IMG/VR virus record: IMGVR_UViG_3300034072_000758
Span: 248,001-312,000 of that record
Strand: one strand, 5' to 3'
DNA length: 64,000 bases
Shown: piece after piece, positions 10,993 through 49,383 of the stretch
How positions within the stretch are numbered: the stretch's first letter is position 1
Layout: each line of letters starts with the position of its first letter
Made by a program: the position numbers and the translations under genes
The notes under the pieces: model-generated
What the model was told of the DNA's origin: nothing
Databases searched by the model: none
Seen by the model: the letters and a program-made list of their open reading frames with translations, nothing else

Positions 10993-11802
10993 ATGAGCAA
11001 TTGGTATCGAAATCTTGTAAATCTGATAGAAAGCGCTATAGACGAAGATGTATCTGACGGTTATTACCCGGCAACCGAACGTAACATAAAGCTTGCTAAA
11101 GCCTTTGTATTCGACAAATGGAAAGAGCGAGCCTATGAGCGCATGGGTGGTTTGGATAGCTATTCTCCGCCTACTGATTTAAGCAATTCCTGTAAATTCA
11201 CATCACAGTTTGTCAAGAATATTTTTGGCGGAACCATACAGGGAAACTTCGATCACCAGTATGTCGTCAAGGATGGTGCTATCATCGATTTGAATATCGA
11301 TGCTAAGGATGTCAAGACATTGGGCGATAAAGCTCATGTCCATGATCCTAAGTTCTTTGGAAAGCGTGACCACAAAGCTTCCATGAAAAGCTGCGAACCA
11401 AGAGTAGCCGCATGGACCCAAGAGTTTCTGTCCAAGTACGGTTCGAAGCTCGATAAAAAGCCTATTTACGAACAAGTTATAGAGCCTATTACGGTCTATC
11501 ATGTTACGCCAAAACGTAATTTGAAATCGATCAAATCCAACGGCTTAACTCCACAAATCGGAGATAATAGCACCCGTCTTGGAGAGACCGAAGAAGCCAT
11601 TCATGTATTTTATAATTTGGACGATCTTGAGGATGCGCTTTCGAATTGGGATTTGTTTGACGAAGATGAAGAACTTGTTTGCTTGAAGATAACAGTACCA
11701 AAAAACGAAGTAAAAGACGATCCGGCGTATCCTAATTCTGTAGGATTGATAAAAACGGTTGTTCCGCCACAGAATATAAAGAAGATGAATATAGAGCTAT
11801 GA
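10993..11802 (+). CDS. Leader-bearing protein: papain/transglutaminase-like domain plus ART-like domain
   Basis: MSNWYRNLVNLIE; NSCKF...DHQYV...IIDL; VYHVTPKRNLKSIKSNGLTP. Confidence 0.6.
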   Translation: MSNWYRNLVNLIESAIDEDVSDGYYPATERNIKLAKAFVFDKWKERAYERMGGLDSYSPPTDLSNSCKFTSQFVKNIFGGTIQGNFDHQYVVKDGAIIDLNIDAKDVKTLGDKAHVHDPKFFGKRDHKASMKSCEPRVAAWTQEFLSKYGSKLDKKPIYEQVIEPITVYHVTPKRNLKSIKSNGLTPQIGDNSTRLGETEEAIHVFYNLDDLEDALSNWDLFDEDEELVCLKITVPKNEVKDDPAYPNSVGLIKTVVPPQNIKKMNIEL

Positions 11803-12914
11803 GTAATTGGTACAGAGAAATTGTAAATCTACTGGAAGGTATCGGAGATATTCGACCGCACATTGAAACGATTGAGAAACAATATGGGGTATCCATAAAA
11901 TACACTATAGACAACAACGTATTTCGTTTAGAAAACATAGATCGAACAACTGGCACCAAAGGCAATGGAAGTCTCGCTTTATCCAAGTTGATCGAACTTA
12001 CTAATGAATATGGATTTAATATTACGCTAACGGTGGATAAAGGTCATCCAAATCTTGTCAAATTTTATCTGGATCATGGGTTTGTCCCTGCCGATCATCC
12101 AACCGACATAAAAGCGTGGTTCAATAAACATCAAAGAGACTGGTATTATGCTGACGAATATGAGCCAGAAGATGAAGATGATGAGCGACCAGAATTACCT
12201 TGGGTGAATATGATACATTACGCCGGTCAAGGAATAAGGTCTCCAAACACCATAATATCAGAAGATTTTAACATAGATGACTATACGTCTCTTGGGTTGG
12301 ATGCGACCAAAGCCGAACCATTCATGAAGGCCGGGTTTTCTCCCAAGGCCGCTAGAATGTATCTTGAAGTCAATGCTACGGTTGATGACGCGATGAGAGA
12401 TCGAGAGTTCGGCGAAAGACGTAGAGCCAAAGAAGAAGCCGAACAAAAAATGCTCGCCAACATCGAAAAAGTTGCGAAGAAGAATACGCCTATCACTTAT
12501 AACGAGGCTTGTGCGATCATCGCAGCCGATGATGATTTGTTCGATTTGGTACGCGGTTGGACTTGGAATGCTGACTATGCTGAGTACGACCAACCGGAAG
12601 ACGCTGCCCGCTTTCTTGCGGTGTTGAAGCGTATGAAGCCGGTTAAGAAGCATCTGTTTCGTGGCCAGATGCCATTTGGTGACCATGATAGCCATACGCG
12701 CGGCTTTCACTCATGGTCGGCCAATCGTCAGACTGCTGAAATTTTCGCCGAACGTAATGGTGTAGTTCTGGAAATTAATCGTCCGATCCAAGGAGTCGCA
12801 TTGAGCGATGTCCTTGATCTGCGCATGAAGCTCAGACCGGGTGAAAGCCATTATGGCGGACCACAAGCTGAATGGTTTGTTGTGGACCAGCCTGAGCAAT
12901 TTAAAAAATATTGA
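11799..12914 (+). CDS. Leader-bearing protein: GNAT-like domain plus R-S-E type ART-like domain
   Basis: MSNWYREIVNLLE; KGNGSLAL...LVKFYLDHGF; LFRG...HSWS...QAEWFV. Confidence 0.6.
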   Translation: MSNWYREIVNLLEGIGDIRPHIETIEKQYGVSIKYTIDNNVFRLENIDRTTGTKGNGSLALSKLIELTNEYGFNITLTVDKGHPNLVKFYLDHGFVPADHPTDIKAWFNKHQRDWYYADEYEPEDEDDERPELPWVNMIHYAGQGIRSPNTIISEDFNIDDYTSLGLDATKAEPFMKAGFSPKAARMYLEVNATVDDAMRDREFGERRRAKEEAEQKMLANIEKVAKKNTPITYNEACAIIAADDDLFDLVRGWTWNADYAEYDQPEDAARFLAVLKRMKPVKKHLFRGQMPFGDHDSHTRGFHSWSANRQTAEIFAERNGVVLEINRPIQGVALSDVLDLRMKLRPGESHYGGPQAEWFVVDQPEQFKKY

Positions 12915-13058
12915 CAGGCTTCAACATGATTTGTCTCCATCGCGGCCTTATGCCATAATGGCATCTTTGAAGAAATTGAAAACCTTTTTGGCTTTGTTTT
13001 TATCGGGTGACCAGCACGTTAGCAACCTCACGTAGCCCAAACGGACTGGATAAAAAAA

Positions 13059-13847
13059 TTACCAATCACCCTCATATGAAGGGTCGATGTAAAGCGGATC
13101 GATCATCACAATCTGTCCATTAGAACGCATCATTAGGTTATGTGGGGTAACATCTGCGTGTGGCTCCCAATTCGAAATGAATTTGGAGAGCTTGGCCAAA
13201 TCAGGATCACCGGCAATCGCGTCCTTATCCCTCCACGGTGCCGAATCAATCTGTTCCATCTTCTCACAAAATTCAACAGCCTTGTCAGTAGGGCAAGGAA
13301 CTAAGGTCTCAAGCCTAACCGCTTTAAAGATGCTATTAATTCGCAATGGGTTCCCTTTTATCTTCGGGACATACTTGTTACCCTTGTTGGATAACATGAA
13401 ATGAACAAACTCATCGTAACCCTGATCGTTGCGATACACTTTCAGAACATATGAATATGCCGGATGACTGAACACCGCTCCGTTGATACCCGATCCAATA
13501 AGGTCGAAGCCATAGTTCTTCATTGTCTTAACGAGGCTACGTTTCCATGCCGGGTTTTTTCTAGCCGCTTGTTGATGCACGTTTTTATCAATTTTAGGGT
13601 CATTAAACGATGATTTGAAATTTCGGTAATCATCGAGCGGACCTTCTTCAAGTTTAGAAATGCGTGGCTTGAAAAGCTTCTGGTCACCCTTATTGGTCTT
13701 CAATACTGGCTGGTTGTGTTCATCCTTATCGAACCCTTTGACAACAGCCTTGCGGTTCTTGAATTTACCCACGAGAACTTCATCGCCGACTTCGATGTCT
13801 GGTAATTCAAGTGTCTCTTTACTTTCAAGGATTTCACGATAGCGCAT
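13059..13847 (-). CDS. Leader-bearing protein kinase-like protein
   Basis: MRYREILE; IGSGINGAVF...VLKVY...ADVTPHNLMM...MIDP. Confidence 0.7.
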   Translation of the reverse strand: MRYREILESKETLELPDIEVGDEVLVGKFKNRKAVVKGFDKDEHNQPVLKTNKGDQKLFKPRISKLEEGPLDDYRNFKSSFNDPKIDKNVHQQAARKNPAWKRSLVKTMKNYGFDLIGSGINGAVFSHPAYSYVLKVYRNDQGYDEFVHFMLSNKGNKYVPKIKGNPLRINSIFKAVRLETLVPCPTDKAVEFCEKMEQIDSAPWRDKDAIAGDPDLAKLSKFISNWEPHADVTPHNLMMRSNGQIVMIDPLYIDPSYEGDW

Positions 13848-13856
13848 GTGTATATT

Positions 13857-14234
13857 TTACCAGTTCTTACAGGACCAGTAATTAGCCTTCCACTTTGGGC
13901 CGGGATCGGTATCGCAATGATGTCTTGCTCTATATGATTTTCTGTGTTCGGGATAACGCTTCTTGATCGTCATATCGGGGTCACCGAAATTGACTTTTAC
14001 AACATTATCCTTGTCGTTCTTCACATAGACAGAAAACTTCTTAGGGCCATCTGGGGTTCTGAATGGTTTGTTCAGTGTAACTTCGCGCCCTTGGTATTCA
14101 GCTTCGGTCAGAGTTTCAGACATTTCTACCCAGCCGTATTTTTCAAAGAAATCGTCACCGTGAAGGGTTTCTTCGCAATTTTCACGGTCGTGAGACTCGA
14201 TAAGATTGATTATATTTCGATACCAGTGTGTCAT
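13857..14234 (-). CDS. Leader-bearing phage protein of unknown function
   Basis: GTTAAATA-TAATC-ATG; MTHWYRNIINLIE; KVNFGDP...YRARHHCD...YWSCKNW. Confidence 0.7.
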   Translation of the reverse strand: MTHWYRNIINLIESHDRENCEETLHGDDFFEKYGWVEMSETLTEAEYQGREVTLNKPFRTPDGPKKFSVYVKNDKDNVVKVNFGDPDMTIKKRYPEHRKSYRARHHCDTDPGPKWKANYWSCKNW

Positions 14235-14251
14235 GATTATATTTAACAACT

Positions 14252-14878
14252 TTAATAAGCTTCATCTTTGAATGTGTAATCAAGAAGATTTATATGAGCA
14301 TTTGGTTTCAGACGAACTTCTTGTTCTTCTTCGTATGCCGGATCAGCGTTCATACCCAATGTGGCGACCCAATCGACTTCGTTTTCATCAACCTCGCCTT
14401 TCAGAACTACAATAACCGGATCAGAGATATGCTCGCGGCCCTGCCAGTAAGCTTCTGCCGAATGTTCTTCCCATGTCCAATATATACCTAAGTGACGAGA
14501 GTTCGGCTTCCACCCGCGAGGGACGGCCATCGCGCGATAGAGAATAATCTTGCCATTTTTTATACGCGAGGCGAGTTCATATTCAACCTCCGCATATCGT
14601 CCACGAACGTATTCAGAAAACCAGTTTTTAAATTCCTCAGTGGTATGGTCTACTTCACTACCATTATTTTTTGTAAAGTCCTTGAAAAAATCATCTTCTA
14701 TATCTTCCGAATCGTCTTCGATACCCATGTCTTCGCGGTATTCATCTTCGACCCGTTCACCCGTACCACTACTCCAATCAATATGATCGTAAGTAAATTC
14801 TACGACAGCATCATGAATATCAGTTGGAATCGAAGCACGTTCCATAAGATTAACAAGATTTCTATACCAGTGTGTCAT
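14252..14878 (-). CDS. Leader-bearing ART-like protein
   Basis: MTHWYRNLVNLME; LYRAM...GIYWT...EEEQEVRL. Confidence 0.6.
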   Translation of the reverse strand: MTHWYRNLVNLMERASIPTDIHDAVVEFTYDHIDWSSGTGERVEDEYREDMGIEDDSEDIEDDFFKDFTKNNGSEVDHTTEEFKNWFSEYVRGRYAEVEYELASRIKNGKIILYRAMAVPRGWKPNSRHLGIYWTWEEHSAEAYWQGREHISDPVIVVLKGEVDENEVDWVATLGMNADPAYEEEQEVRLKPNAHINLLDYTFKDEAY

Positions 14879-14883
14879 GAGTA

Positions 14884-14895
14884 TATTTATAAATA
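14884..14895. promoter_or_regulatory. Bidirectional overlapping late promoters
   Basis: Palindrome TATTTATAAATA gives TATAAATA on both strands, each 5 nt from an ATG (14878 minus, 14901 plus). Confidence 0.8.
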
Positions 14896-14900
14896 TTCAC

Positions 14901-15272
14901 ATGCGCGAATACATGACTATCCTAAACGAAATCTACCAAGAGCCGAAAGACTCTTCGTTCACACATGAGGGGGCGCAATATGATCTGAATGCCATCCTCA
15001 AAGCAACGAAGGATAATGAGACCGTTGATGTTGAGATCGCCGATTTGATCTGGGTATTCAAGTACGATCCGATGACCGAGGAAGATGCCGACCGAATATT
15101 CGGTTCCGACTTGGAAGCACCAATCCTGATCACCGTCGAAACCGAGGATGACCAAGAAAAAGTTGTTGTCTTGGATGGAGAGCACCGCCTAGCAAAAGCT
15201 GTGCTCTCAGGTCGAGCCACGTTACCAGCCGTCAAAGTTGATAGAGAATTTCTTTCGAAATTCAAAATTTAA
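14901..15272 (+). CDS. Leader-bearing ParB/Srx-like protein
   Basis: MREYMTILNE; PILI...VLDGEHRLAKA. Confidence 0.7.
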   Translation: MREYMTILNEIYQEPKDSSFTHEGAQYDLNAILKATKDNETVDVEIADLIWVFKYDPMTEEDADRIFGSDLEAPILITVETEDDQEKVVVLDGEHRLAKAVLSGRATLPAVKVDREFLSKFKI

Positions 15273-15275
15273 AAG

Positions 15276-15560
15276 TTATACGCGCTTGTGATTACGTTTA
15301 TCGACTGTGATAAACAAGTACCAAGTTTCGCCATTATCACCCTCGAACACTTTACATGTTTCCAGTTGATAATTTCCTACTTTGCTCTCGCTACCAGTCT
15401 GAATGAAATACTTGTTCCGGCGTGACTTATGAAGCTTGCGCGCATGGTTGCCAGCTTTCAACCGAACAAAGATACGACCATTCTCGGAGAATACCTTGTC
15501 CAGATATTCTTTAACCAGTGGGTGATCTGTCGGGTAATCGCCATATGCTATATCGACCAA
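15276..15560 (-). CDS. Hypothetical protein
   Basis: AGGAGG RBS, TTG start. Confidence 0.6.
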   Translation of the reverse strand: MVDIAYGDYPTDHPLVKEYLDKVFSENGRIFVRLKAGNHARKLHKSRRNKYFIQTGSESKVGNYQLETCKVFEGDNGETWYLFITVDKRNHKRV

Positions 15561-15664
15561 TGCTGCCTCCTAAGTTAACTCGAACGGGTTACCGTAAGTG
15601 TTAGGGTAATATTTTCAAACAGTATCAGGTGCTCGTGTTTTGTCAATGTAATAATAAATATCAT

Positions 15665-16573
15665 ATGCGTTTATATGAAATAATGGCAAATTGGCAAATA
15701 GAAGAACAATACGCTTATGGTGATTGTGATATACTTGCTATAGGTTTACATATAAAATTGAAGTTACCACTCAGAGCCGTGGTCGATGGTGACAAGTATT
15801 CGCATGTTTGGGTATCCCCATCACCCAATACCGCACTTGATATATGGGGAGAGCGCCCAGAAAAAGAAATATATCAAGCTTGGATCGCAGAAGATGATCA
15901 AGGTGGCGAAATTAAAACCGTCTCCCTCGAATGGCTGATGGCACATTTACCAGCCAAACAAAAAGAAAATCTAAATCAGCGAGTGAAAAAATCGTTAGAA
16001 GATTTTAAAATAGTTCACCCGAACAGTAGGTTGATTGAATCTTTCGGAAAAGTATTTAACTTTGATCCACAATTAGGCGACAAAACCCTGTTCGATCTGG
16101 ATGTTAAGGCTCGAAATGGCAGCTTAACACAAGACGACTTGAAATCTTTCAGAGCATTATTGAACCGCGATAAAAACGCATTTGTTCGTATGTATCATGG
16201 CACATCAAGCTCACATGACGTTCTGGGAAAAGGATTACTACCAACCTCACCAAATCGCTCTAAAAGCCTCCAAAGTGCCGCAGGATATGTTTATGTAGCA
16301 TATGATCCGAGGATGGCGTTAGCGTTCGCACGACACGCTTACCCATCTGATAATGAATTTACCGTTTATGCCGTGGATGTGACGATAGCTCGTTTATTAC
16401 CAGACCACGATCAATTACGAAACAAACGACATTTCGCCGGTATAGAAGTGGGAGACAGTCTTGTCGATTCATTAATCTTTGGTGGTGGAGCAAGAGTTAA
16501 GGGAAAGATCAGTCCGATGCAAATTCATATCTACGGTAAATTTGATAAGAGCGGTAAAGAGATTGATTTTTGA
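15665..16573 (+). CDS. Leader-bearing protein: papain-like domain plus ART-like domain
   Basis: AATAAATA-TCAT-ATG; MRLYE; YGDCDILAIGL...HVWV...ALDIWG; RLIE linker; MYHGT...GLLP...YVYVA. Confidence 0.6.
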   Translation: MRLYEIMANWQIEEQYAYGDCDILAIGLHIKLKLPLRAVVDGDKYSHVWVSPSPNTALDIWGERPEKEIYQAWIAEDDQGGEIKTVSLEWLMAHLPAKQKENLNQRVKKSLEDFKIVHPNSRLIESFGKVFNFDPQLGDKTLFDLDVKARNGSLTQDDLKSFRALLNRDKNAFVRMYHGTSSSHDVLGKGLLPTSPNRSKSLQSAAGYVYVAYDPRMALAFARHAYPSDNEFTVYAVDVTIARLLPDHDQLRNKRHFAGIEVGDSLVDSLIFGGGARVKGKISPMQIHIYGKFDKSGKEIDF

Positions 16574-16605
16574 TGCGGCACGAAGATCGATAACTTGATC
16601 TTGAA

Positions 16606-16959
16606 TTAGGATAGCAATGCCAGCATGGTCATGAAATGGTCGCGGAAGGCGCGGCCATTTTTATTGAACGTGATCGAACGCACCGATTTAATCTTAGAGT
16701 TCTTGATAAAAATATTGAGACGCCACCCGTTACCAACGATGCGGTATCGAGTGTAATAGTCTTGCATTCCAATATCCAAGACGCTCCAATGGGCTACGAT
16801 AAATTTGAACTCGTAGCCTTGAAACGATGCTGGGGCCGTAAACCAATCTACAACAAATGGAATGAATGATTTACACGTCTTGAATTTGGTATCACCCAAA
16901 TGATTGAGATCAAACAGATAGTTGTAGATTGCATCTTTCTGATCTTCGGTGAATGTCAT
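16606..16959 (-). CDS. Hypothetical protein, C-terminal tail family
   Basis: Ends FRDHFMTMLALLS. Confidence 0.6.
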   Translation of the reverse strand: MTFTEDQKDAIYNYLFDLNHLGDTKFKTCKSFIPFVVDWFTAPASFQGYEFKFIVAHWSVLDIGMQDYYTRYRIVGNGWRLNIFIKNSKIKSVRSITFNKNGRAFRDHFMTMLALLS

Positions 16960-17168
16960 TGAGGAACACAAACCGCATCGAGCGTCGTTTCGGTGATCGT
17001 GGTGTTACAGTAATCATCTGTGCTTGGATTCGTGCGACGGTCGCGGTAACGCCCTTGCTCCATGACCGCTTCTTGTTCGGCTCGCTCCTGTGACGTGAAG
17101 ACACCCACAAGCCATTGTGACATGACATCGTAATCGTGGTTGTCGGCGTATACCACCCAGACCTTCAT
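16956..17168 (-). CDS. Hypothetical protein
   Basis: MKVWVVY...GVFTSQERA, a common small phage protein pattern. Confidence 0.6.
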   Translation of the reverse strand: MKVWVVYADNHDYDVMSQWLVGVFTSQERAEQEAVMEQGRYRDRRTNPSTDDYCNTTITETTLDAVCVPQ

Positions 17169-17431
17169 GCTTGTAACACCCATTCCGAGATCATAAACAG
17201 ATTGTCATAGCCCTCGACGGATATGCCATACACCCAATGAACCTTTCGTCCGGCGCGCGCGTCGATCATCATAATCTCCCCGGTCGCAACGTCTTCCTCC
17301 GAAAACTTGAAATCATTAATGAAGTTCGCCGGAAAAGAAACCTTCTGATCCAGAGTAAATTTCGGCGGGTAATCCGGCAGAATCTTTTCTGGGATTGCCA
17401 TTCGTGAGGAATAAATCGGGTAGCTGGTCAC
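17165..17431 (-). CDS. Hypothetical protein
   Basis: Overlapping start/stop with neighbours. Confidence 0.55.
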   Translation of the reverse strand: MTSYPIYSSRMAIPEKILPDYPPKFTLDQKVSFPANFINDFKFSEEDVATGEIMMIDARAGRKVHWVYGISVEGYDNLFMISEWVLQA

Positions 17432-17913: not shown

Positions 17914-17960
17914 GACTATTAAAATTGACTTAACGTGTCAACCTCAATTATGATTAACGT

Positions 17961-20667: not shown

Positions 20668-20771
20668 CGTGTCCTCACAATCAGATTATTCATACCATAA
20701 ATCGACAGCTTATCAACTTTTTTATTGATCATTGATCTCAAAGCAAATATTATGCGGGTAGGAGAAATATT

Positions 20772-30352: not shown

Positions 30353-30567
30353 TTCGAGTTATAGCAAACATAACCCATCGGGACGGTCCAGTCGAGATTA
30401 CAGACCGGGCAGTTGGAAGGAGGTGGAATATACGGGTCACCCGTAGTCCGATGCGGTAACGGGGTGGGAGGATTACCCGTGGGTTCCTCATATTCCTGTG
30501 ATAGAAGCTCGTCTAATTTCTTCTGGTTCATGGAAAGATGATACATTAACCATGAAGCAAAAAGCAA
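30325..30567 (-). CDS. Small Cys-rich protein (start likely MNQKK)
   Basis: CPVC...GYVC...CPC. Confidence 0.55.
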   Translation of the reverse strand: MLFASWLMYHLSMNQKKLDELLSQEYEEPTGNPPTPLPHRTTGDPYIPPPSNCPVCNLDWTVPMGYVCYNSKCPCHHIVT

Positions 30568-30578
30568 TAAATAAATTC

Positions 30579-31724
30579 ATGCGTTTACTTGAGTTAAAAC
30601 ATTCCGAACAAACTGTTGTACTGTATAGAGGCGACAATAAGCGTATCGATGTGTTTGATATTGAACAAACCGATATTAAGGCTCTGTTCGGAAAAGGTAT
30701 CTATTTGACTGATAGCAAAGTAGTCGCAAAGGATTACGCAAAGAAAGGCATTAATGTATTCTTCGAGGGTGATTACCCTTCTAAGAGTAAGAAAAGTCTA
30801 CTTAACAAATACTTGTTCAAAGTCATGATGGAAGAACTTAACCTTAAAGAAAAGGTCTACATGGCGACAAACAAAAAATATGAGCCGGAATTTCCGCGAT
30901 CTGGTCCTGAGCGGGTTCAAGCCATTGCTATGCTTAAGCTGGCAGTGAAGCACGTTGTTGCCGAGACGTTAGCTAAGGCCGTCACACTTTGGAATCAGCG
31001 TCGAAAGAATGTCAAGTTCCACACTGATACAACCGGGGCAGTCGTCATGATCGACAAGTCTGTTAAGGGGAGCGTATCTGAGTTCCACATTCCGACCGAT
31101 TATATGGCGCGTGTATTGGATGGCGAAGCACCCCTCCCAGACAAAGCTTTGAAGGTCGTTCGAGACACATTCGATGCCTTCCGTAGAAGCAAAGGTGGAT
31201 CAATCGAAGATGCTTTAGATTTTAGAAGTGTTGCGCACAAAGATAGCTTGGTCACTAAACATCTGAACTTCGATCAGTTCATAAAATACTATAAATCGCA
31301 TGGTTCCGAATATGCTTGGAGTGATGATGATGTGCGTGGTGGTGATAATCAGAACCCATCATTTGACTTCATCTTCAATGGTCAACACGCCGGGGAAATT
31401 TTAAAGATCAAAGAATTTCAGGATCATTTGATCGCGGGTCTCATGACTATTGGATATGTCGGTTTCAAATATGATGGTGGTATCCGCGCTGGGGGTGCTC
31501 TGGCTCGTGGCGGTGGTGGTTTGCGTCACACAGCGTATTCATTCTGGAACGCAGAATATATCAACGCACATCGCGTCAATGATGAAGAACCAGAAGACGC
31601 AAGAAACTATAATCCAAAGGTTACCGTTGACGATTATGAATTTGCGATTAACAGTGCTGTGGGCGAATCTGTCGAGATCGCCGAGACGTTCGATACGTCG
31701 CTTGATGTAAAATACAGAGGGTAA
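30579..31724 (+). CDS. Leader-bearing ART-like (polyvalent-protein type) protein
   Basis: AATAAATA-AATTC-ATG; MRLLE; LYRG...F...LFGKGIYLTDS..VA..YA; GYVGFKY. Confidence 0.65.
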   Translation: MRLLELKHSEQTVVLYRGDNKRIDVFDIEQTDIKALFGKGIYLTDSKVVAKDYAKKGINVFFEGDYPSKSKKSLLNKYLFKVMMEELNLKEKVYMATNKKYEPEFPRSGPERVQAIAMLKLAVKHVVAETLAKAVTLWNQRRKNVKFHTDTTGAVVMIDKSVKGSVSEFHIPTDYMARVLDGEAPLPDKALKVVRDTFDAFRRSKGGSIEDALDFRSVAHKDSLVTKHLNFDQFIKYYKSHGSEYAWSDDDVRGGDNQNPSFDFIFNGQHAGEILKIKEFQDHLIAGLMTIGYVGFKYDGGIRAGGALARGGGGLRHTAYSFWNAEYINAHRVNDEEPEDARNYNPKVTVDDYEFAINSAVGESVEIAETFDTSLDVKYRG

Positions 31725-35482: not shown

Positions 35483-35554
35483 ATTTTATACTCCCGATAT
35501 AAATGATATAGTTTCACCTTACCACATGTTTTCTGGTTGTCAATAAATACACCT

Positions 35555-36202
35555 ATGCGTTATCACGAAATACTTAGAGAAAGCCGAGAAGCATCTTTGT
35601 ATCATGGCTATAAGAAGCCGGAACATGCTCGCATGGCTCTTGAGGCTAACGAAATGTTGGGGACAACTACTCAGCGCTGGTGGCCTAACGGGGTTGAACT
35701 CGTCCCCGAAGATGACCCTAAGTACCGCGAATCATACTGGATGAAGGGTATCTCGTTGACCCGCGATCTTAGCTACGCAGCGCATTGGGGAGACATTATT
35801 TTTGAACTCGATCAGCGCGCATTGTCTTACAATTATAAGATCATACCATTCAACTGGATGCGAGGTCGAGCACAGAAATATTCAGTCAATGATACGCAAA
35901 GCGACGTAGCTCACTTTAGAAAGGGTGAGCGCGAAGAGTTTCTGATCCTTGAAAAGGGACCAAATAATTACATGTTTCCGAAAGACCCTGAGTTCGATGA
36001 TTACCCGGAGTATGAACCGCGTTTAGACCTCAAGGCTTTTAAGACCCCAGCTAACAAAAAGCTGGCTCCATTGTCTCGCTACTTAAAAGCAATTTATGTC
36101 GAGCCGTATTTCATGAACAAATATCCCGAAACATATGACTATCAGTATTTTATTGATCATCCTAAATTCGGTGGATTTAAGTCTTTCCCGCGCAGAAAAT
36201 AA
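35555..36202 (+). CDS. Leader-bearing ART-like protein
   Basis: AATAAATA-CACCT-ATG; MRYHEILRE; LYHG...GISLTRD...EREE. Confidence 0.6.
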   Translation: MRYHEILRESREASLYHGYKKPEHARMALEANEMLGTTTQRWWPNGVELVPEDDPKYRESYWMKGISLTRDLSYAAHWGDIIFELDQRALSYNYKIIPFNWMRGRAQKYSVNDTQSDVAHFRKGEREEFLILEKGPNNYMFPKDPEFDDYPEYEPRLDLKAFKTPANKKLAPLSRYLKAIYVEPYFMNKYPETYDYQYFIDHPKFGGFKSFPRRK

Positions 36203-39618: not shown

Positions 39619-39620
39619 GG

Positions 39621-40058: not shown

Positions 40059-40090
40059 TATATCCCAAACAAAGATATTGTCAAGCTATC

Positions 40091-40528: not shown

Positions 40529-40561
40529 TCTGGTTGCTCGCTGCCATAGCCTTCGGCATAC

Positions 40562-41659: not shown

Positions 41660-41732
41660 TTGTAACCCCAGCTTGTTAAGAAATTGTTAACCGAATTGCG
41701 TTCGGTTGTCAAATCTCATTTCAAACATAAAA

Positions 41733-42966: not shown

Positions 42967-43081
42967 AGAAAATGCTCCTATATTATTTCGATCTTTCTTT
43001 CATAGCATAGATTTCAAAAATGTAAAGTCATCTTGATTTACTTAATGATGTTTTGTATAATAGGTTAATGGAGAATTAAAT

Positions 43082-43540
43082 ATGTTTGATCTGAATGGTA
43101 TATTGCCTGAGAGCTATCCCAATATATTGATAAAACTTACCGATCTTATGGATATTCCTGTATTAGTTGACGCTATTGAAAATATAGATAATGATTCAAA
43201 AACTATTCCAATGATGCTTCATTTGAGAGTGGGTGGGGCCTATGATCGCATGATTGCTTATTATTTCGACGCGATCAGAAATCTTCAAAAAACGGACAAA
43301 GAAATAGCATCTATGTTCGCTATCTCTTTAAAAGACGTATATTCTATGCGAGCGGGTATTTTTGAAGCGTGTCTGAAACGAGCGATACCCATGCTCTACC
43401 ATGACTATTTCCAACACAATAGGAGTGGTTGCGAATGGAGCTTCGAAACTTCCTACAGAAGGAAACTTATCGATACAAACTTGCGCAACCCTCACGCATT
43501 GTATATAAATAGCTTCATTCGTTTCCACAGGTACGCCTAA
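43082..43540 (+). CDS. Hypothetical protein with a possible HTH
   Basis: TDKEIASMFAISLKDVY; TTGATT..TATAAT promoter and GGAG RBS. Confidence 0.55.
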   Translation: MFDLNGILPESYPNILIKLTDLMDIPVLVDAIENIDNDSKTIPMMLHLRVGGAYDRMIAYYFDAIRNLQKTDKEIASMFAISLKDVYSMRAGIFEACLKRAIPMLYHDYFQHNRSGCEWSFETSYRRKLIDTNLRNPHALYINSFIRFHRYA

Positions 43541-43548
43541 ATATTCCC

Positions 43549-43839
43549 ATGAGAGACATCCTAAACAAACTGAGCGGCTTAACCGAAAGTGAATCCTTGA
43601 CGCACGAGGATAAGAAATACGTATGCTATACGGAAGATAGCAACGGCAATCAGCTATCTCAATTTTATGGCGATGCTATCAACGATCTTCTCAAAGAAGC
43701 CCTTCGTTCGGATGACTCTGTTCATGTTGTGACTATATTCCGCAATGAGAATAACGAACACGTTGCTACTTATACTCGCACGGACGCGCCAACTCTTCGT
43801 GGTGATGGCTGGGAACTGATTAAACAAAATATTGGTTGA
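43549..43839 (+). CDS. Leader-bearing small late protein
   Basis: CCTAAATA-TTCCC-ATG; MRDILNKLSGLTE. Confidence 0.65.
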   Translation: MRDILNKLSGLTESESLTHEDKKYVCYTEDSNGNQLSQFYGDAINDLLKEALRSDDSVHVVTIFRNENNEHVATYTRTDAPTLRGDGWELIKQNIG

Positions 43840-43886
43840 TTTCGTAGACTAAGCTTTCTATAGTCTTCCCACTATAGGAGTTCAGA

Positions 43887-44615
43887 ATGTCAGATACCGA
43901 GGTTAGCCCATCGCATTGGATGCTTGAGCCAGATGCTCGCATTTTCAAGCACATAGGCTATGATCTCAATCCTTCCAAAATGCGAATGATGATGGAGTTT
44001 GCCGAGAACTTCAACCAATCAAAATTCAATGATGGTAAGCATGTATCTGGGCGCGATCTGATCTTTAATTTTTTCAGCATACCCGATAAAAGCGTTCGTG
44101 CCGAGATTGGTGATGAATTGCTCAACTTTATCATTGGGCCGTGTGCCGAACGCTATAAGGTCAACAATGACCTGAAACTGTTCACCGATCTTGTCAAATT
44201 TCCTCTTCTATACACACTCGTGGAAGTCTTGTCTCTTGGGCTTCTTCCAACAAGTGCTCGTAAAGACTTCTATCCAAAATTCCTCGATCTGGGAGATACG
44301 TTCTCCCCGGAGATTCCCAATATCGAAATGGGGCCGTTGGGGCTTGTCGTCAATCCCGATCCGCTATGGGAAGCGCGAACACAGGTCTTCGGGCTTCTCG
44401 CCGAGGTATGCGCACCGATCTTTGATGAAGCTGGGTCCGGGGAGATTGCTGAGATCGCCCGCAAGATCATCGCTGATAACCCGGCGCAAGCGGACAAGGC
44501 CAGAGAGGATCAAAAGCTGGTGGGATGGTTCATGGGCCAAGTCATGAAACAGCTTAAGACCAAGACCGATCCTAACGCTGTTCGAGCGGTCGTAATCGAA
44601 GAGTTGTCCAAATGA
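43887..44615 (+). CDS. Protein with C-terminal GatB/YqeY tRNA-binding domain
   Basis: IIADNP......KLVGWFMGQVMK......DP..V. Confidence 0.75.
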   Translation: MSDTEVSPSHWMLEPDARIFKHIGYDLNPSKMRMMMEFAENFNQSKFNDGKHVSGRDLIFNFFSIPDKSVRAEIGDELLNFIIGPCAERYKVNNDLKLFTDLVKFPLLYTLVEVLSLGLLPTSARKDFYPKFLDLGDTFSPEIPNIEMGPLGLVVNPDPLWEARTQVFGLLAEVCAPIFDEAGSGEIAEIARKIIADNPAQADKAREDQKLVGWFMGQVMKQLKTKTDPNAVRAVVIEELSK

Positions 44616-44986
44616 AGATAGGCGATGTGGAAGCCGATACGGCGTTCTGGGTAAGATTTTGGAACGTTACTCCGACAGAGGGATACCTAAAACACTGGAA
44701 TGGTAGAACGATCCGCCTGATAAAAGCGCGTCACCAGATGCGAGACAGCATAGGGATGTATTCTTTCTATTATCGTCTCGATCTCCATATTTACGGGATG
44801 ATGCGTTGCTATGTATCTTGGAATACAAGGCGCGTGTTGCCCGGTGTTGATCATCCGTCAATTGAGTTTTATGGCCCGACGCCCATTGAGAAAAATTTCA
44901 AGAAATCTTGGATAAAATTCTACAAGGACTGTAATGTCAACGAAGTTCAAGACATCATGGTTATGGCTATGATGGGTATACTTTAA
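44612..44986 (+). CDS. Hypothetical protein, C-terminal tail family
   Basis: Ends EVQDIMVMAMMGIL. Confidence 0.6.
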   Translation: MKIGDVEADTAFWVRFWNVTPTEGYLKHWNGRTIRLIKARHQMRDSIGMYSFYYRLDLHIYGMMRCYVSWNTRRVLPGVDHPSIEFYGPTPIEKNFKKSWIKFYKDCNVNEVQDIMVMAMMGIL

Positions 44987-45032
44987 CCCTTGCTTAATTC
45001 CAAAACGCTTGATTTAACAGAGGGTCTTGTGG

Positions 45033-45065
45033 TATAAATACTGTACGGCCCTTAAGGCCGTTTTT
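45033..45065 (+). promoter_or_regulatory. Late promoter TATAAATA followed by a short hairpin and T tract, upstream of the RF1-like gene
   Basis: TATAAATA 45033-45040; ACGGCC-CTTAA-GGCCGT-TTTT. Confidence 0.55.
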
Positions 45066-45078
45066 ATGGAGTATCACG

Positions 45079-45762
45079 ATGAAGTATAATATCGAGATTC
45101 GCTCCGCCGAAGGTGGGAGCGATAGTCAGCTTTTCGTAGCTGATCTGGCCAATGCTTATGCCAAACTCTTCAACTCGAAGGGTTGAAAGCACCGTGTCGT
45201 AAAAGAGAGACCGAGCGACACAGGTTTCTTCGAAATCACCATAGAGGTCAATGGTGAAAATCTCAAACAATTAAAGAATGAAGCTGGTGGACACCGTATC
45301 CAACGTGTTCCACCAACGGAAAAACGTGGCCGGGTACATACCAGTACCGTAACGGTCGCGGTGATCGATGCTGACCAGACGCAGGATACTGCCGACGAAC
45401 AGTTCGAATACCGTTGGTTCTCAGGCACCGGGGCTGGTGGTCAACACCGTAACAAGCACCAGAACTGCCTAGAGCTTACACACGTCGCCACAGGCATCAA
45501 ACAGAGCGCCCACGGGCGTTGTCGAGAAAGCAACAAGCGTGAGGCTCTGGACGCCATCAGGGCGAAGCTACAGAGCCATTATGCGGGTCAGTTTGGTGTC
45601 AAGAAGAATACGGATCGTTCCAGTCAGATCGGATCGGGAATGCGCGGGGACAAGCGCCGCACATATCGTTTCCAAGATGATTCGGTGGTCGATCATGAAA
45701 CCAATAAAGCCACGTCCTGCCGGTCTCTAATGAAGGGGAAGTTTGACGAGCTTTGGTCCTAA
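45079..45762 (+). CDS. RF1-like peptide chain release factor lacking domain 1, with in-frame TGA at codon 36
   Basis: GGAG RBS; MKYNIEIRSAEGGSDSQLF...YAKLFNSKG*KHR...EAGGHRIQRVPPTEKRGRVHTSTVTVAV...GAGGQHRNK...KRRTY; TGA at 45184-45186. Confidence 0.85.
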
Positions 45763-46076
45763 GCGACACCCGGAGCGGGGTTCTTATCCCGCTCCATATT
45801 CGTTCGGATGCGCCCACGTAGAATGTTTTTGGCGTGAGTGAAATATATGGTTTCGTTCTCAGTAAAGAAGTCGAAAGAGACAATCTCTTTTATGAGAGAA
45901 TGGTACGCCCATTTCCGCACCAAATCGTCTTCGATCTTAGATATACCGACGATCATGTTACTGTAGTGGTTCACGAAGCTGGCGATTTTTCGCACCCGTA
46001 CATCATCGGGCGCTTTTACCAGCATGTCGGCCAGATTGATCGCGGCTTGAGAATTTCCGAAAGTCGTGGGGTTCAT
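45759..46076 (-). CDS. Hypothetical protein
   Basis: Operonic ORF. Confidence 0.55.
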   Translation of the reverse strand: MNPTTFGNSQAAINLADMLVKAPDDVRVRKIASFVNHYSNMIVGISKIEDDLVRKWAYHSLIKEIVSFDFFTENETIYFTHAKNILRGRIRTNMERDKNPAPGVA

Positions 46077-46675
46077 ACGTGTAACATTACCTTCATTAGG
46101 TCTTCTTCTAGTTTGGTCATGTCACCACAAACAATCAAGGGTGTGTTGACAATAATACCATGCGGGGGTGATTTGCCCCAGCGCCCGATGCTTCCGTTTT
46201 CGGTCTCAACATATAGAACTTTGATCGGGATTTTAGAACGATTTGATGTTTGATAATGACTATAACCGGAATCGCGGAAATGCCTATCCCATTCATTCTC
46301 GCGTTGTCTTTGCTTATATTCTTCGTCCACATAATGAGTACGAAAAGACGGTCCCTTAAAGCTAGGGCGTGTTTCTATCACCGCATTTCCTTCGCGGTCA
46401 TATGTATGTTTAATTGCGAAATCTGGGTAATCTTTGATATGGTCTTCGATCCGGCGCAGAAAAGTTTCAAATGTGGTGAAATCGAAAGAGATTTTCTTCG
46501 CATCGATCCACTGACCAAAACTTATGTACGAGTCCTCGTCAGATAAGGATTTGTGTCTATTATATTTGGCTTCTTCGGCCTCAAACCAGACGCTCGAACG
46601 TTCTTCTTCACGATCAATGCTGGCCGTGAACCAGATAGTCAATAAGACAGCAACAACCCCTAGTGCGATCCACAT
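46073..46675 (-). CDS. Membrane-anchored protein, C-terminal tail family
   Basis: N-terminal TM; ends LEEDLMKVMLHV. Confidence 0.65.
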   Translation of the reverse strand: MWIALGVVAVLLTIWFTASIDREEERSSVWFEAEEAKYNRHKSLSDEDSYISFGQWIDAKKISFDFTTFETFLRRIEDHIKDYPDFAIKHTYDREGNAVIETRPSFKGPSFRTHYVDEEYKQRQRENEWDRHFRDSGYSHYQTSNRSKIPIKVLYVETENGSIGRWGKSPPHGIIVNTPLIVCGDMTKLEEDLMKVMLHV

Positions 46676-47125
46676 TTACTTCAAAGCCGCTATTTCTCTG
46701 TAAACCAGTTCGATAGAACGAATATTTTCAAGAATTTCGTTCGTTGGCTTAAGCGCATGGGCGATACGGGCGGCTGTCTGAAAGATCATTTCTTCATTAG
46801 CCAGATCACCAGTACCATTCTCCTTACGAAGCAATTCACGAATTTCAGCCCAATCCGCGTCATAGCGGGATTGAATGGCATTCTTGGATGCTTCGTAAGT
46901 CGCCACTTCGGCGCGATAATTTAACAATTCCGTCTTGGCGTTTTCGAGTTCTTCGTCCGTGAAATTGGCGAGGCTCTTTGCCAGCAGTGGCGACGGGATA
47001 GGGGCAATCGGATTTGCCATGCGGGGGAAGAAATGGCCCGCATTCAGCTTGGCCCTCAGTGTCGTAGGTTCGGTGCGATCTTTGTGGTCGATCTCTACTT
47101 CGAAATTGAGGTAATCAGGATTCAT
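46676..47125 (-). CDS. Hypothetical protein
   Basis: AGGGG RBS. Confidence 0.65.
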   Translation of the reverse strand: MNPDYLNFEVEIDHKDRTEPTTLRAKLNAGHFFPRMANPIAPIPSPLLAKSLANFTDEELENAKTELLNYRAEVATYEASKNAIQSRYDADWAEIRELLRKENGTGDLANEEMIFQTAARIAHALKPTNEILENIRSIELVYREIAALK

Positions 47126-47146
47126 TACTCGCCCCTAAAATGACTT

Positions 47147-47194
47147 GTCCCGACTACATGGCTTTGGGGGGGGGGTGGACCATGTAGCCGGGAC
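47147..47194. repeat. 15-bp imperfect inverted repeat with a G10/C10 loop
   Basis: GTCCCGACTACATGG ... CCATGTAGCCGGGAC. Confidence 0.75.
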
Positions 47195-47303
47195 TTGCTC
47201 AACCAGAAAGGCGCTTACCCTCTGGGAGAAGCCTACTATGATAGATGGATGACTCCGTGTCAACACTTATTTTCAAACTTTTTGTGTTTGAATAAATATG
47301 TGT

Positions 47304-47837
47304 ATGATCGATTTAGAAAAGATACAGGAATCCCAACACCTTTTGGATGTTCTTCTACAGATGGAAGACGTTCTCGACTCGTTGGATTTGTACGTTTTTG
47401 AGAACTGGTATAATGGCGAGATCATTGATGGTCCGAACATCAAGAGATACTGGCTCGATTTCACGTTAAAATACGCATGGGACAAGCAACCAGACGATAA
47501 AGCTGCTTATCGTCTTATGAAACATGGTATTCGTGTATCCTTTGATAAGATGAGATATTCTAAGGGTAAGGAAGAACCGGAGATCGTTGAAGATGAAGAC
47601 GATGAAGAAAAGGTATTTCTTGCTGTAAAGATCAGTATACCTCGTATGCTTTGCGTACAAATTGCCGACGAAGAACTTGACTTCTACGATGAAGAAATTG
47701 ATGCGGAGGACGTTTCTGACGCTAAGGACTCTGACATCGAGAGTGAAGACGAATATTATGGAGACCAAGAAGGCGACGATGATATGAACGCCGACGCAGA
47801 AGGAGAGGCCCCAGATGACCAAGAAAAACCTCAGTGA
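47304..47837 (+). CDS. Acidic late protein of unknown function
   Basis: AATAAATA-TGTGT-ATG; LDSLDLYVFENW..GEII.GP...RYW. Confidence 0.75.
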   Translation: MIDLEKIQESQHLLDVLLQMEDVLDSLDLYVFENWYNGEIIDGPNIKRYWLDFTLKYAWDKQPDDKAAYRLMKHGIRVSFDKMRYSKGKEEPEIVEDEDDEEKVFLAVKISIPRMLCVQIADEELDFYDEEIDAEDVSDAKDSDIESEDEYYGDQEGDDDMNADAEGEAPDDQEKPQ

Positions 47838-49383
47838 GGGCCTAAGACGTGGTGATCTGGAAGACCAAGTTCTTCCTATGATCTCCTTCGATGAATATGA
47901 AAGCAACTTCGGCGACACCGCCCTGACTATCGCTTTTTATATTCATGGTAAGGACGCCGCGACCGACTTCAACAAATTTCTCCAAAAGTCTCACGTAAAC
48001 TTCCTCACGACCGATATTTCGCCATCGCAGGATAAGGACGGTTACTACGCTGTATTTGTCGAGTTCAAGATCGATGACAAGCTTATCGCCAACTTCTTTG
48101 ACATCATCGAAGAGGTAAATAACCTCACCCTGATCGAAGAATGGCAAATCCACTTGAATAACCGCGAACTCATGGCTCTCTCAAAAAAAGCCTTGGAGTT
48201 CTATATCCACGCCAAGTACGAGCGCGTGATCATGAAGGAAGATGTTCAAGAAGATACCAGCGTCGAACAAAAGGCCAAGGCATTCATTGTTAAAAATTTA
48301 GAACACCTCAGCAAGTATTATTCCCTACGTGATTTCAAGAGTGAAGACGCCGCGCGCGAGTTCTATTTTAACTCCTTGGAAAAGGACGATAAATCACCTT
48401 GGGTTCAAGCCATGCCAAGTAGTTTCCACGGTACTGAACTGAATAAGGCAATTAGTCTACTTGTGCCAATCTACAAGGCTGGTAAGAATTTCCGTATCGG
48501 CAAAGCTCCAAAGAAAGTTGCTAGAGACCCTTGGGCCGAAATTGATGTCACCACACCAAGCCTCGCGCCATTACAGTCTGTAGGCATTCTGAACCCATTC
48601 GACGGCTATAAAGTGAAGGGTGTGAAGATGCTCTCGATCAACGATATTAATATGACAGAAGACCATAGTTATACTACTGGTGGAGTCAAAAAAGTCGAAT
48701 GGTTGGCCGAGAAGATTAAAGAGAATGGGAAATTTACGGCCATTATCGTGAACCAAGATTATTCTATTTTGGACGGGCATCACCGTTTTAGAGCCATTCG
48801 TGATTATCTGCGTTACAAGACCATTCCCGCGCTGGTAATCGAAATCAATGACGGAACCAACGAAAGCTATCTGATCGAAGGCTCTGGGGAAGAAGTGACT
48901 TTTGAAAATGTTCACATTGATTTTCATCACGATCAACATGATTATGAATTACGTGCCATCATTCTGGGTAAAGTTGTTGGCTATATACGCTATGTCGTTT
49001 ATCAGGACGAAGTTCACCTCAGCATGATCAAGGTCCACGAGGATTACCGTCGCAAGGGAATAGCTACACAACTGGTGAAGCATCTACAAAAGATGTTCCC
49101 CAATACTGAAATACAAAAGGGTTCAATGACCGATGATGGTTCAAAGCTGTTTGGTGTCTTGCCAACTCATACTGTCGTTGATCCTAATTATGCGCCCAAG
49201 TTCAAGCGCCACGAAGAAGTCAAGAATATGTTAAAGAAATATTCCGATGACTTTGAGGCAATGTCGGATAAGTCAACCTTTATGGATACTCACTCGGATT
49301 GGAATGATCTCCACGACGAAAACGACAAGTTAGATCAAGAGCTTTACGGTAAAAAACCAACAAAAACAATATTTAAGGTGTAA
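47815..49383 (+). CDS. Multidomain late protein: N-terminal domain, ParB-like and GNAT
   Basis: MTKKNLSE; ILDGHHRFRA (ParB); IKVHEDYRRKGIATQL (GNAT). Confidence 0.75.
   Translation: MTKKNLSEGLRRGDLEDQVLPMISFDEYESNFGDTALTIAFYIHGKDAATDFNKFLQKSHVNFLTTDISPSQDKDGYYAVFVEFKIDDKLIANFFDIIEEVNNLTLIEEWQIHLNNRELMALSKKALEFYIHAKYERVIMKEDVQEDTSVEQKAKAFIVKNLEHLSKYYSLRDFKSEDAAREFYFNSLEKDDKSPWVQAMPSSFHGTELNKAISLLVPIYKAGKNFRIGKAPKKVARDPWAEIDVTTPSLAPLQSVGILNPFDGYKVKGVKMLSINDINMTEDHSYTTGGVKKVEWLAEKIKENGKFTAIIVNQDYSILDGHHRFRAIRDYLRYKTIPALVIEINDGTNESYLIEGSGEEVTFENVHIDFHHDQHDYELRAIILGKVVGYIRYVVYQDEVHLSMIKVHEDYRRKGIATQLVKHLQKMFPNTEIQKGSMTDDGSKLFGVLPTHTVVDPNYAPKFKRHEEVKNMLKKYSDDFEAMSDKSTFMDTHSDWNDLHDENDKLDQELYGKKPTKTIFKV

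What the first reader, a model, noticed from the sequence alone, without database searches (positions are those of the whole stretch)
10993..49383. Internal [IL]-x-E sites at domain boundaries suggest protease-cut polyproteins
Seen: in the multidomain leader proteins the same motif lies at the junctions between domains. Examples are PIYE/QVIE before the ART of 10993, IISE in 11799, KLEE before the kinase in 13059, TLTE in 13857, RLIE in 15665, EIAE in 30579 and YLIE before the GNAT of 47815. Inference: one leader loads a chain of domains that the prohead protease then separates into pieces small enough to be ejected. The motif is short, so chance matches are possible.
Basis: inference. Interest (0 to 1): 0.6.

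Follow-up and report, generated by a model that had tools for sequence, protein, structure and literature searches.

The report
Protease-site motifs between phage cargo domains
In a 517-kb T4-related giant phage, proteins tagged for loading into the capsid carry the head protease's short cutting motif at their tag and again at the seams between fused domains, so one tag may load several enzymes that are then cut apart; this is well supported by comparison but not yet shown by experiment.

Summary
All eight cited tetrapeptides are present. Five (PIYE, IISE, KLEE, TLTE, RLIE) lie at seams that I could define without using the motif. Four of these align in register with the end of the N-terminal leader of stand-alone homologues elsewhere. 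Three do not fit the description. QVIE has V at P3 and Pro at P1'. EIAE is 12 residues from a C-terminus. YLIE is in a protein with no consensus leader and eight such motifs.

The window belongs to a 516,805-bp phage with a T4-type prohead protease (Peptidase_S77) and at least 25 genes with two conserved leader types ending in [IL]xE.

Evidence beyond chance:
- [IL]xE is 1.8-fold enriched in junction windows across homologues (3.3-fold with small P1'); [IL]xD, [IL]xK and [IL]xxE are not enriched.
- The motif is depleted inside leader-protein bodies.
- AlphaFold places two sites in linkers.
- Among cultured viruses, an N-terminal extension ending in [IL]xE before one shared domain occurs in 3 of 3 phages with S77; only one motif, in a different context, occurs in 7 viruses without S77.

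Best reading (confidence about 0.5): fusions of leader-tagged cargo cassettes keep the leader's cut site, and the prohead protease separates the domains. The main rival is that these are uncut fusion relics. The "small enough to eject" rationale is unsupported. This is a new variant of T4 capsid-targeting and gp21 processing.

The parts
10993..11031 (+). Class A leader (13 aa, ends L-I-E) of the 269-aa protein 10993-11802
   Evidence: predicted helix 3-15
11461..11484 (+). PIYE (res 157-160) and QVIE (161-164) in the linker between the N-domain (29-152) and the Tpt1/KptA-like ART-fold C-domain (165-264)
   Evidence: Domain limits and the AlphaFold model. Foldseek match to Tpt1, E 1e-4. I-Y-E aligns with the leader end I-F-E of the 117-aa stand-alone homologue P0015.
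11799..11837 (+). Class A leader of the 371-aa protein 11799-12914
12252..12263 (+). IISE (res 152-155), the seam between the GNAT-like half plus acidic linker and the C-terminal half
   Evidence: Stand-alone homologues L003-L005 start with a class B leader ending I-N-E or I-F-E in register. The N-half has a leader-tagged stand-alone paralogue at genome 141194.
13824..13847 (-). Class B leader (MRYREILE) of the 262-aa protein 13059-13847
13644..13655 (-). KLEE (res 65-68), at the end of a 55-aa KOW-like module and before the kinase-like domain; the only internal [IL]xE in the protein
   Evidence: Homology to 8 IMG/VR contigs ends at res 67-73 in 6 of them. Kinase PHROG hit at res 100-164, E 6e-11. 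Motif count.
14196..14234 (-). Class A leader of the 125-aa protein 13857-14234
14103..14114 (-). TLTE (res 41-44), directly before the conserved 80-aa domain (A-E-Y-Q-G-R...)
   Evidence: 48 of 119 homologues have [IL]xE at exactly this place. Among cultured viruses this extension is seen only in those with S77 protease.
15665..15706 (+). Leader-like N-terminus (14 aa, L-Y-E and I-E-E) of the 302-aa protein 15665-16573
16028..16039 (+). RLIE (res 122-125) in a low-confidence linker before the ART-like C-terminal part (from res 126)
   Evidence: 22 stand-alone homologues of about 185 aa start with class A or B leaders. 19 have [IL]xE in the short leader directly upstream of the domain, most in register with RLIE, and 2 have V-S-E. 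pLDDT is below 50 at 118-126.
31674..31685 (+). EIAE (res 366-369 of 381) of the ART-PolyVal-like protein 30579-31724; a C-terminal tail site, not a domain seam
   Evidence: no homologues found
48868..48879 (+). YLIE (res 352-355) between ParB_N (270-349) and GNAT (367-431) of the 522-aa protein 47815-49383, which has no consensus leader; residues 1-233 match a virion structural protein family
7156..7194 (+). Class A leader of a single-domain ART-like protein (7156-7539), showing the unfused cassette form
14840..14878 (-). Class A leader of the 208-aa protein 14252-14878, which has no internal [IL]xE
35555..35581 (+). Class B leader (MRYHEILRE) of the 215-aa protein 35555-36202
14901..14930 (+). 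Leader-like start (10 aa ending L-N-E) of the 123-aa protein 14901-15272, after a TAAATA box

Best explanation
The phage loads many small enzymes into its prohead. These include ADP-ribosyltransferase-fold proteins, acetyltransferase-like proteins and a kinase-like protein. Loading uses short N-terminal capsid-targeting leaders of two types, 13 and about 9 residues long, that end in [IL]-x-E. The T4-type S77 prohead protease removes them by cutting after the Glu.

Genes for such leader-tagged cassettes lie side by side, and some have fused. The fusion keeps only the last residues of the downstream leader, the cut site, in an exposed linker. So one leader carries two or three modules into the prohead, and the protease then separates them.

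Shown here: the protease gene, the leaders, the fusion history, the in-register sites, the linker location and the statistical enrichment. Inferred: packaging, and actual cleavage at both the leader and the internal sites.
For: 1. The genome has a Peptidase_S77 gene and a T4-type major capsid protein. The presumptive capsid maturation site is V-M-E|S here and L-M-E|T in phage Phosso.
2. About 25 genes carry the two leader types. These are conserved as amino acids with synonymous codon changes.
3. Internal motifs align in register with the leader ends of stand-alone homologues for the 11799 protein, the 15665 protein, the 10993 protein, the 13857 protein and the genome genes 9388-10707 and 223536-225596. 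P1 and P3 are kept while the rest of the leader has decayed.
4. Before the 10993-type C-domain the motif sits 4-12 residues upstream, at varying distance.
5. In 92 junction windows of homologues, [IL]xE is seen 47 times against 26.3 in shuffles. [IL]xE[SAG] is seen 18 times against 5.5. Control motifs give ratios of 0.87-1.2.
6. Leader proteins are poor in the motif: 0.72 against 1.04 per 100 aa (P 0.02). O/E is 0.68 once the junction sites are set aside (P 0.003).
7. Predicted linkers hold the sites.
8. There is no internal promoter box or start codon at the seams.
9. In cultured viruses, the extension ending in [IL]xE before the 13857-type domain occurs in 3 of 3 with S77. Of 7 without S77, five proteins start directly at the domain, one has a short extension without the motif and one has an L-E-E in a different context.
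10. gp21 cuts after L/I-x-E, and T4 Alt is cut at both ends (PMC9026906).
Against: - There is no proteomic or biochemical evidence for any cut.
- In-register motifs are also what an uncut fusion relic would look like.
- Enrichment is only 1.8-fold, and about 40% of junction windows have a motif.
- The reversed spacing E-x-[IL] is also enriched 1.6-fold.
- The link between having a leader and having a junction motif is only a trend (18/31 against 21/58, P 0.07).
- Homologues are related, so windows are not fully independent.
- Some P1' residues (Pro after QVIE, Asp after IISE, Gln after PIYE) differ from the Ser, Gly or Ala common after leaders.
- The first seam of the 47815 protein (res 233-267) has no motif.
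- In the 13857 family the hydrophobic P3 column is also often I or L when P1 is not Glu (24 of 70).
Confidence: 0.5

Rival explanations
1. Fusion relics. The internal motifs are leftovers of the downstream gene's leader after in-frame fusion of neighbouring leader cassettes. The fused proteins are packaged and act whole, and the motif is not cut or its cutting does not matter.
For: Fusion history is directly visible. Relics would be in register by construction. Some P1' residues are unfavourable. In SPN3US all mapped prohead-protease cuts release N-terminal propeptides only (PMC10052503).
Against: P1 Glu and P3 Ile/Leu are kept in all six fusions while the other leader positions have decayed. 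The motif's distance to the domain varies. Enrichment is specific to [IL]xE and strongest with small P1'. The motif is avoided inside cargo bodies, which implies exposure to a protease of this specificity, and an exposed linker site would then be cut.
Confidence: 0.3
2. Structural motif. A hydrophobic-x-acidic triplet is simply a common way to start these domains (a strand or helix cap) and has nothing to do with the protease.
For: In the 13857 and 15665 families the motif is at a fixed distance from the domain. The P3 column is often hydrophobic even without Glu at P1. E-x-[IL] is also enriched.
Against: In viruses without S77 the 13857-type protein mostly starts directly at the domain (5 of 7), so the domain does not need the triplet. 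[IL]xD, [IL]x[KR] and [IL]xxE are not enriched. The distance is variable before the 10993-type C-domain.
Confidence: 0.1
3. Chance. The motif is three residues long and occurs about once per 100 residues, so the reader picked coincidences.
For: Background density is 0.98-1.04 per 100 aa. This explanation is adequate for YLIE, EIAE and QVIE.
Against: The five supported sites fall within a few residues of independently defined seams in proteins that have only 1-3 internal motifs. Shuffle tests give P below 0.0005.
Confidence: 0.05

Closest known systems
Phage T4 internal proteins IPI-III and Alt: capsid targeting sequence plus gp21 processing
   Same: An S77 prohead protease that cuts after L/I-x-E. 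An N-terminal targeting leader of about 10 residues that is removed in the prohead. An ADP-ribosyltransferase among the cargo. A T4-late-promoter-like box upstream. (PMC9026906.)
   Different: There are two leader types (13 and about 9 aa) on about 25 genes rather than four. The cargo is often two or three fused modules with a further site at each seam. In T4, proteins that stay in the virion lose only terminal propeptides, and only core proteins are cut into several pieces (PMC9026906).
Polyvalent proteins of phages and conjugative elements (Iyer, Burroughs, Anand, de Souza, Aravind 2017, PMC5512222)
   Same: Several unrelated effector domains (ART, ParB-like and others) in one polypeptide that is delivered with the DNA. 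That paper also proposes that the chain is processed into working units. The 10993 N-domain occurs inside proteins of 2,270 and 3,238 aa.
   Different: There the processing is ascribed to an embedded zincin metallopeptidase. None is present in the seven cited proteins. Here the seams carry the prohead protease's motif. The proteins are small (125-522 aa). No paper in the library joins 'capsid targeting' with 'polyvalent protein'.
Head-protein processing in phiKZ, 201phi2-1 and SPN3US giant phages
   Same: A gp21-related protease cuts many packaged or ejected proteins after Glu in a three-residue motif. Propeptides may hold several sites (PMC9026906, PMC10052503).
   Different: The motif there is S/A/G-x-E, and the phage lineage is different. 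Mapped substrate cuts release N-terminal propeptides rather than separating enzymes (PMC10052503).

Membership tests
T4-type capsid-targeted, gp21-processed head cargo | The phage encodes a Peptidase_S77 (gp21-type) prohead protease | tested here: met
   PF03420, E 1.5e-21, 75 bits (cut-off 27), at genome 323908-324354
T4-type capsid-targeted, gp21-processed head cargo | T4-type major capsid protein with an N-terminal propeptide | tested here: met
   PF07068, E 3.8e-91. The model starts at residue 65 of the 403-aa protein, which leaves an N-terminal extension containing L-L-E and V-M-E
T4-type capsid-targeted, gp21-processed head cargo | Short N-terminal leader ending in L/I-x-E, conserved as protein | tested here: met
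   Two leader classes on about 25 genes. Synonymous codon variation is present. The DNA pattern gives 5 matches in the window against 0.03 expected
T4-type capsid-targeted, gp21-processed head cargo | Late expression | tested here: inconclusive
   A TAAATA box lies 4-5 nt before the start codon of nearly all leader genes and of structural genes. No RNA data exist
T4-type capsid-targeted, gp21-processed head cargo | Protein found in virions with the leader removed | not testable with these tools
   Needs virion proteomics
Polyvalent proteins (PMC5512222) | Two or more unrelated effector domains in one phage polypeptide | tested here: met
   10993: N-domain plus Tpt1-like ART fold. 13059: KOW-like module plus kinase. 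47815: virion protein plus ParB_N plus GNAT
Polyvalent proteins (PMC5512222) | Signature Pfam domains such as ART-PolyVal | tested here: inconclusive
   ART-PolyVal hits of 24.5 and 25.5 bits lie below the 31.2-bit cut-off
Polyvalent proteins (PMC5512222) | Embedded zincin metallopeptidase as the processing agent | tested here: not met
   No peptidase family is found in the seven cited proteins. An HExxH segment occurs only in genome genes 223536-225596 and 106280-107629
Protease-processed polyprotein | A site matching the cognate protease at every domain seam | tested here: inconclusive
   Present at the seams of 10993, 11799, 13059 and 15665. Absent at the first seam of 47815 (res 233-267)
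Protease-processed polyprotein | Separated products observed | not testable with these tools
   Needs N-terminomics or an in vitro cleavage assay

The most novel reading that the evidence does not exclude
T4-related phages, from 150-kb marine myoviruses to this 517-kb phage, share a grammar for head cargo. Every cargo module is preceded by a gp21-type [ILV]-x-E cut site. Modules can therefore be fused, shuffled and loaded behind a single capsid-targeting leader, and the prohead protease undoes the fusions inside the capsid. This would be a polyprotein strategy in a DNA phage, driven by the maturation protease rather than by a peptidase inside the cargo.
Probability: 0.45. Interest if true: 0.75.

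Novelty: new variant of a known kind. Interest (0 to 1): 0.6.

Why it matters
If the seams are cut, a three-residue motif plus a leader of about 10 residues is enough to predict which proteins a T4-related phage injects, and in what pieces. That would turn hundreds of unannotated genes in giant phages into a defined set of candidate host-takeover enzymes.

It would also explain how cargo genes can fuse and shuffle without loss of function. It extends the T4 expression-packaging-processing idea to several proteins loaded behind one tag. The prediction can be tested directly with virion mass spectrometry on cultured relatives.

Tried and rejected
Searches that found nothing:
- Megablast of the region against cultured phages: no match.
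- tblastn against cultured phages with the 11799 protein, the 15665 C-part, the 10993 N-domain and the KOW-like module: no match.
- IMG/VR scans for relatives of the 10993, 15665, 47815 and 30579 proteins: none.
- Word search with the 10993 C-domain: none; the full HMMER search then found it.
- Late-promoter-plus-leader DNA pattern in phage Phosso: no match. The leader pattern alone gave one match, so the leader families are not shown to be expanded in that relative.
- tRNA scan of the window: none.

Readings tested and rejected:
- An internal promoter or start codon at the seams, which would give separate expression. None is present.
- Leaders conserved only as nucleotides for leaderless translation. 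Rejected because of synonymous variation and because other genes with the same box lack the leader.

Weak result: leader-positive against leader-negative homologues gave only a trend (P 0.07).

Not attempted:
- A complex prediction of protease with substrate, because a transient enzyme-substrate contact is outside what that test can judge.
- Read laying, because no RNA run holds the stretch and reads cannot show proteolysis.

Only genetic code 11 was used.
Full report
**Context.** The window is bases 248001-312000 of a 516,805-bp virus record with direct terminal repeats.
- The genome has a T4-type prohead protease (Peptidase_S77, E 1.5e-21) and a T4-type major capsid protein (Gp23 family, E 3.8e-91). 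Both lie just outside the window.
- The nearest cultured relatives by capsid protein are Sinorhizobium phage Phosso (78% identity, 469 kb) and Agrobacterium phage Atu_ph07 (67%, 490 kb).
- Runs that hold the stretch are subsurface and soil metagenomes.
- In Atu_ph07, mass spectrometry found 112 virion-associated proteins beyond those predicted (PMC6102473). A heavy protein load in this lineage is therefore plausible.

**The leaders.** Two conserved N-termini recur.
- Class A is 13 residues (M-S/T-N/H-W-Y-R-N-[LI]-[VI]-N-L-[ILM]-E). It is found on five window genes and two more in the genome.
- Class B is about 9 residues (M-R/K-Y/F-x-E-[IL]-[LI]-x-E). It resembles the T4 capsid targeting sequence and is found on about 18 genes.
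- Both classes end in [IL]-x-E. This is the motif after which T4 gp21 cuts (PMC9026906).
- Codons vary synonymously (Arg by AGA, CGA or CGT; Leu by four codons), so selection acts on the peptide.
- Nearly all these genes have a TAAATA box 4-5 nt before the ATG.
- The presumptive capsid maturation site is V-M-E|S here and L-M-E|T in Phosso. Val at P3 is therefore probably tolerated.

**The observation.** All cited tetrapeptides are present. I defined the seams without using the motif.
- 10993 protein. 1,092 HMMER hits split into an N-domain family that ends at residues 145-158 and a C-domain family that starts at 158-167. AlphaFold gives domains 29-152 and 165-264 with a linker at 153-164. The C-domain matches Tpt1/KptA, an ART fold. 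The 117-aa stand-alone homologue P0015 begins with a leader whose I-F-E aligns with I-Y-E of PIYE.
- 11799 protein. Three IMG/VR homologues match residues 151-368 only. They begin with a class B leader whose I-N-E or I-F-E aligns with I-S-E. The N-half has its own leader-tagged stand-alone paralogue.
- 15665 protein. 22 homologues of about 185 aa cover residues 122-301. Each starts with a class A or class B leader, and most end in register with L-I-E before S-F-G. The model has pLDDT below 50 at residues 118-126 and above 90 from residue 130.
- 13059 protein. KLEE closes a 55-aa KOW-like module that is 60-85% identical in eight contigs. There the module sits at the start, middle or end of other multidomain proteins, and internal copies are again preceded by I-G-E, L-N-E or L-A-E. 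KLEE is the only internal motif in 262 residues. The C-domain hits a T7-type kinase PHROG.
- 13857 protein. TLTE lies directly before a very widespread 80-aa domain. 48 of 119 homologues have [IL]xE at exactly that place. Of the 49 with Glu at P1, 48 have I or L at P3. Here the piece between leader and site is only a 27-residue spacer, so this is a doubly cut propeptide rather than two domains.

**Sites without support.**
- QVIE has Val at P3 and Pro at P1'.
- EIAE is 12 residues from the C-terminus of an ART-like protein. At most it recalls the C-terminal trimming of T4 Alt (PMC9026906).
- The 47815 protein has no consensus leader and eight motifs. Its first 233 residues match a virion structural protein family, and that first seam has no motif.

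**More cases outside the window.**
- Genome gene 9388-10707 carries T-L-E-E at residue 155-159. This aligns with the leaders of two stand-alone paralogues.
- Gene 223536-225596 carries L-N-E...L-T-E before G-R-D. This aligns with the leader of the adjacent gene 225618-226277.
- In all six fusions P1 and P3 are kept, while the targeting half of the leader has decayed.

**Statistics.**
- [IL]xE occurs 0.98-1.04 times per 100 aa in other proteins of the genome. In leader proteins the density is 0.72 (P 0.02 against random sets of 25 proteins). O/E falls to 0.68 once the nine junction sites are set aside (P 0.003).
- Across homologues of the 10993 N-domain, 92 junction windows hold 47 motifs against 26.3 in composition-preserving shuffles (P below 0.0005). 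With Ser, Ala or Gly at P1' the count is 18 against 5.5.
- In the same windows [IL]xD, [IL]x[KR], [IL]xQ, [IL]E and [IL]xxE give ratios of 0.87-1.11. E-x-[IL] is also raised, at 1.6-fold. Domain cores are depleted (71 against 114).
- Before the 10993-type C-domain the motif lies 4-12 residues upstream, so it is not a fixed structural element.
- Proteins with an N-terminal leader have junction motifs more often (18/31 against 21/58), but this is only a trend (P 0.07).

**Link to the protease.** Ten cultured viruses carrying the 13857-type domain were examined.
- The three with an S77 protease (phage C48C1, Pelagibacter phage HTVC008M, Flavobacterium phage immuto) all have an N-terminal extension ending in [IL]xE directly before the domain.
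- Of the seven without S77 (podoviruses, siphoviruses and an archaeal spindle-shaped virus), five proteins start directly at the domain. One has a short extension without the motif. One has an L-E-E in a different context.
- The domain therefore does not need the triplet; the protease-bearing phages add it.
- S77 is also present on two of the contigs that carry the KOW-like module.

**Interpretation.**
- The fusion origin of the seams is shown.
- That the leaders are capsid-targeting propeptides cut by the S77 protease is a strong inference from T4.
- That the internal sites are cut is likely but unproven. Exposure in linkers, retention of P1 and P3, motif avoidance in cargo bodies and specific enrichment all point that way.
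- There is no internal promoter or start codon that could express the downstream module alone.
- The main rival is an uncut fusion relic.
T4 ejects Alt from its head (PMC9026906), and phage N4 packages its large virion RNA polymerase unprocessed (PMC5512222). A simpler benefit is that one leader loads several enzymes in fixed ratio.

**Comparison with known systems.**
- The parts are T4-like: capsid targeting sequence, gp21 and Alt.
- The multidomain effectors fit the 'polyvalent protein' theme. In that work, processing was proposed to come from embedded zincin peptidases (PMC5512222), which the cited proteins lack.
- In SPN3US, apart from the protease's own self-cleavage, all mapped prohead-protease cuts release N-terminal propeptides (PMC10052503).
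- No paper in the library links capsid targeting with polyvalent proteins.
- I therefore rate this a new variant of a known kind.

Noticed in passing
genome-wide; in the window e.g. 7139-7155, 10976-10992, 15649-15664, 30562-30578, 35538-35554: A TAAATA box ends exactly 4-5 nt before the start codon of 45 of 770 crude genes (12 at 4 nt, 33 at 5 nt). Only one of them has a Shine-Dalgarno-like motif. With T4-late-promoter geometry these late mRNAs would be leaderless.
   Followed up: partly
window 47304-47837 and 47815-49383: Two overlapping late genes match 'virion structural protein' PHROGs (12928, and 13138 at residues 1-233). The second is fused to ParB_N and GNAT domains, so a nuclease-like and an acetyltransferase domain may ride on a structural protein.
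   Followed up: partly
window 13644-13820 (-); loci L006-L013: A 55-aa KOW-like module is 60-85% identical across eight otherwise different viral contigs. It sits at N-terminal, internal or C-terminal positions of multidomain proteins. This is unusually high conservation for a shuffled module, and its role is unknown. No match in cultured phages.
   Followed up: partly
window 49387-49935 (+): A ferritin/Dps-like protein (PF00210, E 2e-29) that starts M-R-L-F-E. It has a ribosome-binding-like upstream sequence rather than the TAAATA box.
   Followed up: partly
window 58213-58926 (+); genome 9388-10707, 142551-143441, 514400-515656: A paralogous family shares a W-[IL]-[IL]-[AV]-H-R-x-x-H motif and has no Pfam match. 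Three of the four members carry class B leaders.
   Followed up: no
genome 223536-225596 (-) and 106280-107629 (+), outside the window: The two genes share an HExxH zincin-like segment. The second protein starts with an ART-like Y/F-H-G-T strand. These are the only candidates here for the metallopeptidase of classical polyvalent proteins.
   Followed up: no
L001 1432-2067 (protease) and 463-1416 (acidic scaffold-like protein), genome 322408-325854: The protease itself starts M-S-L-L-L-R-E, with an L-x-E near its N-terminus as noted for T4 gp21. The acidic 317-aa protein upstream has I-L-E and I-I-E in its first 15 residues.
   Followed up: no
L004 and L005 (IMG/VR contigs of 21 and 46 kb): The stand-alone homologue of the 11799 C-half, with a CTAAATA box 5 nt before its ATG, lies next to ABC-transporter-like genes on high-GC contigs. 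The contigs may be phage fragments carrying host-like genes, or misassigned.
   Followed up: no
proteins P0002-P0173 from the two homologue searches: The same two leader types (for example M-R-N-W-I-N-L-V-E and M-R-Y-x-E-I-I-x-E) head many metagenomic homologues. Orthologous domains carry either type, so leaders are exchanged between cargo genes.
   Followed up: partly
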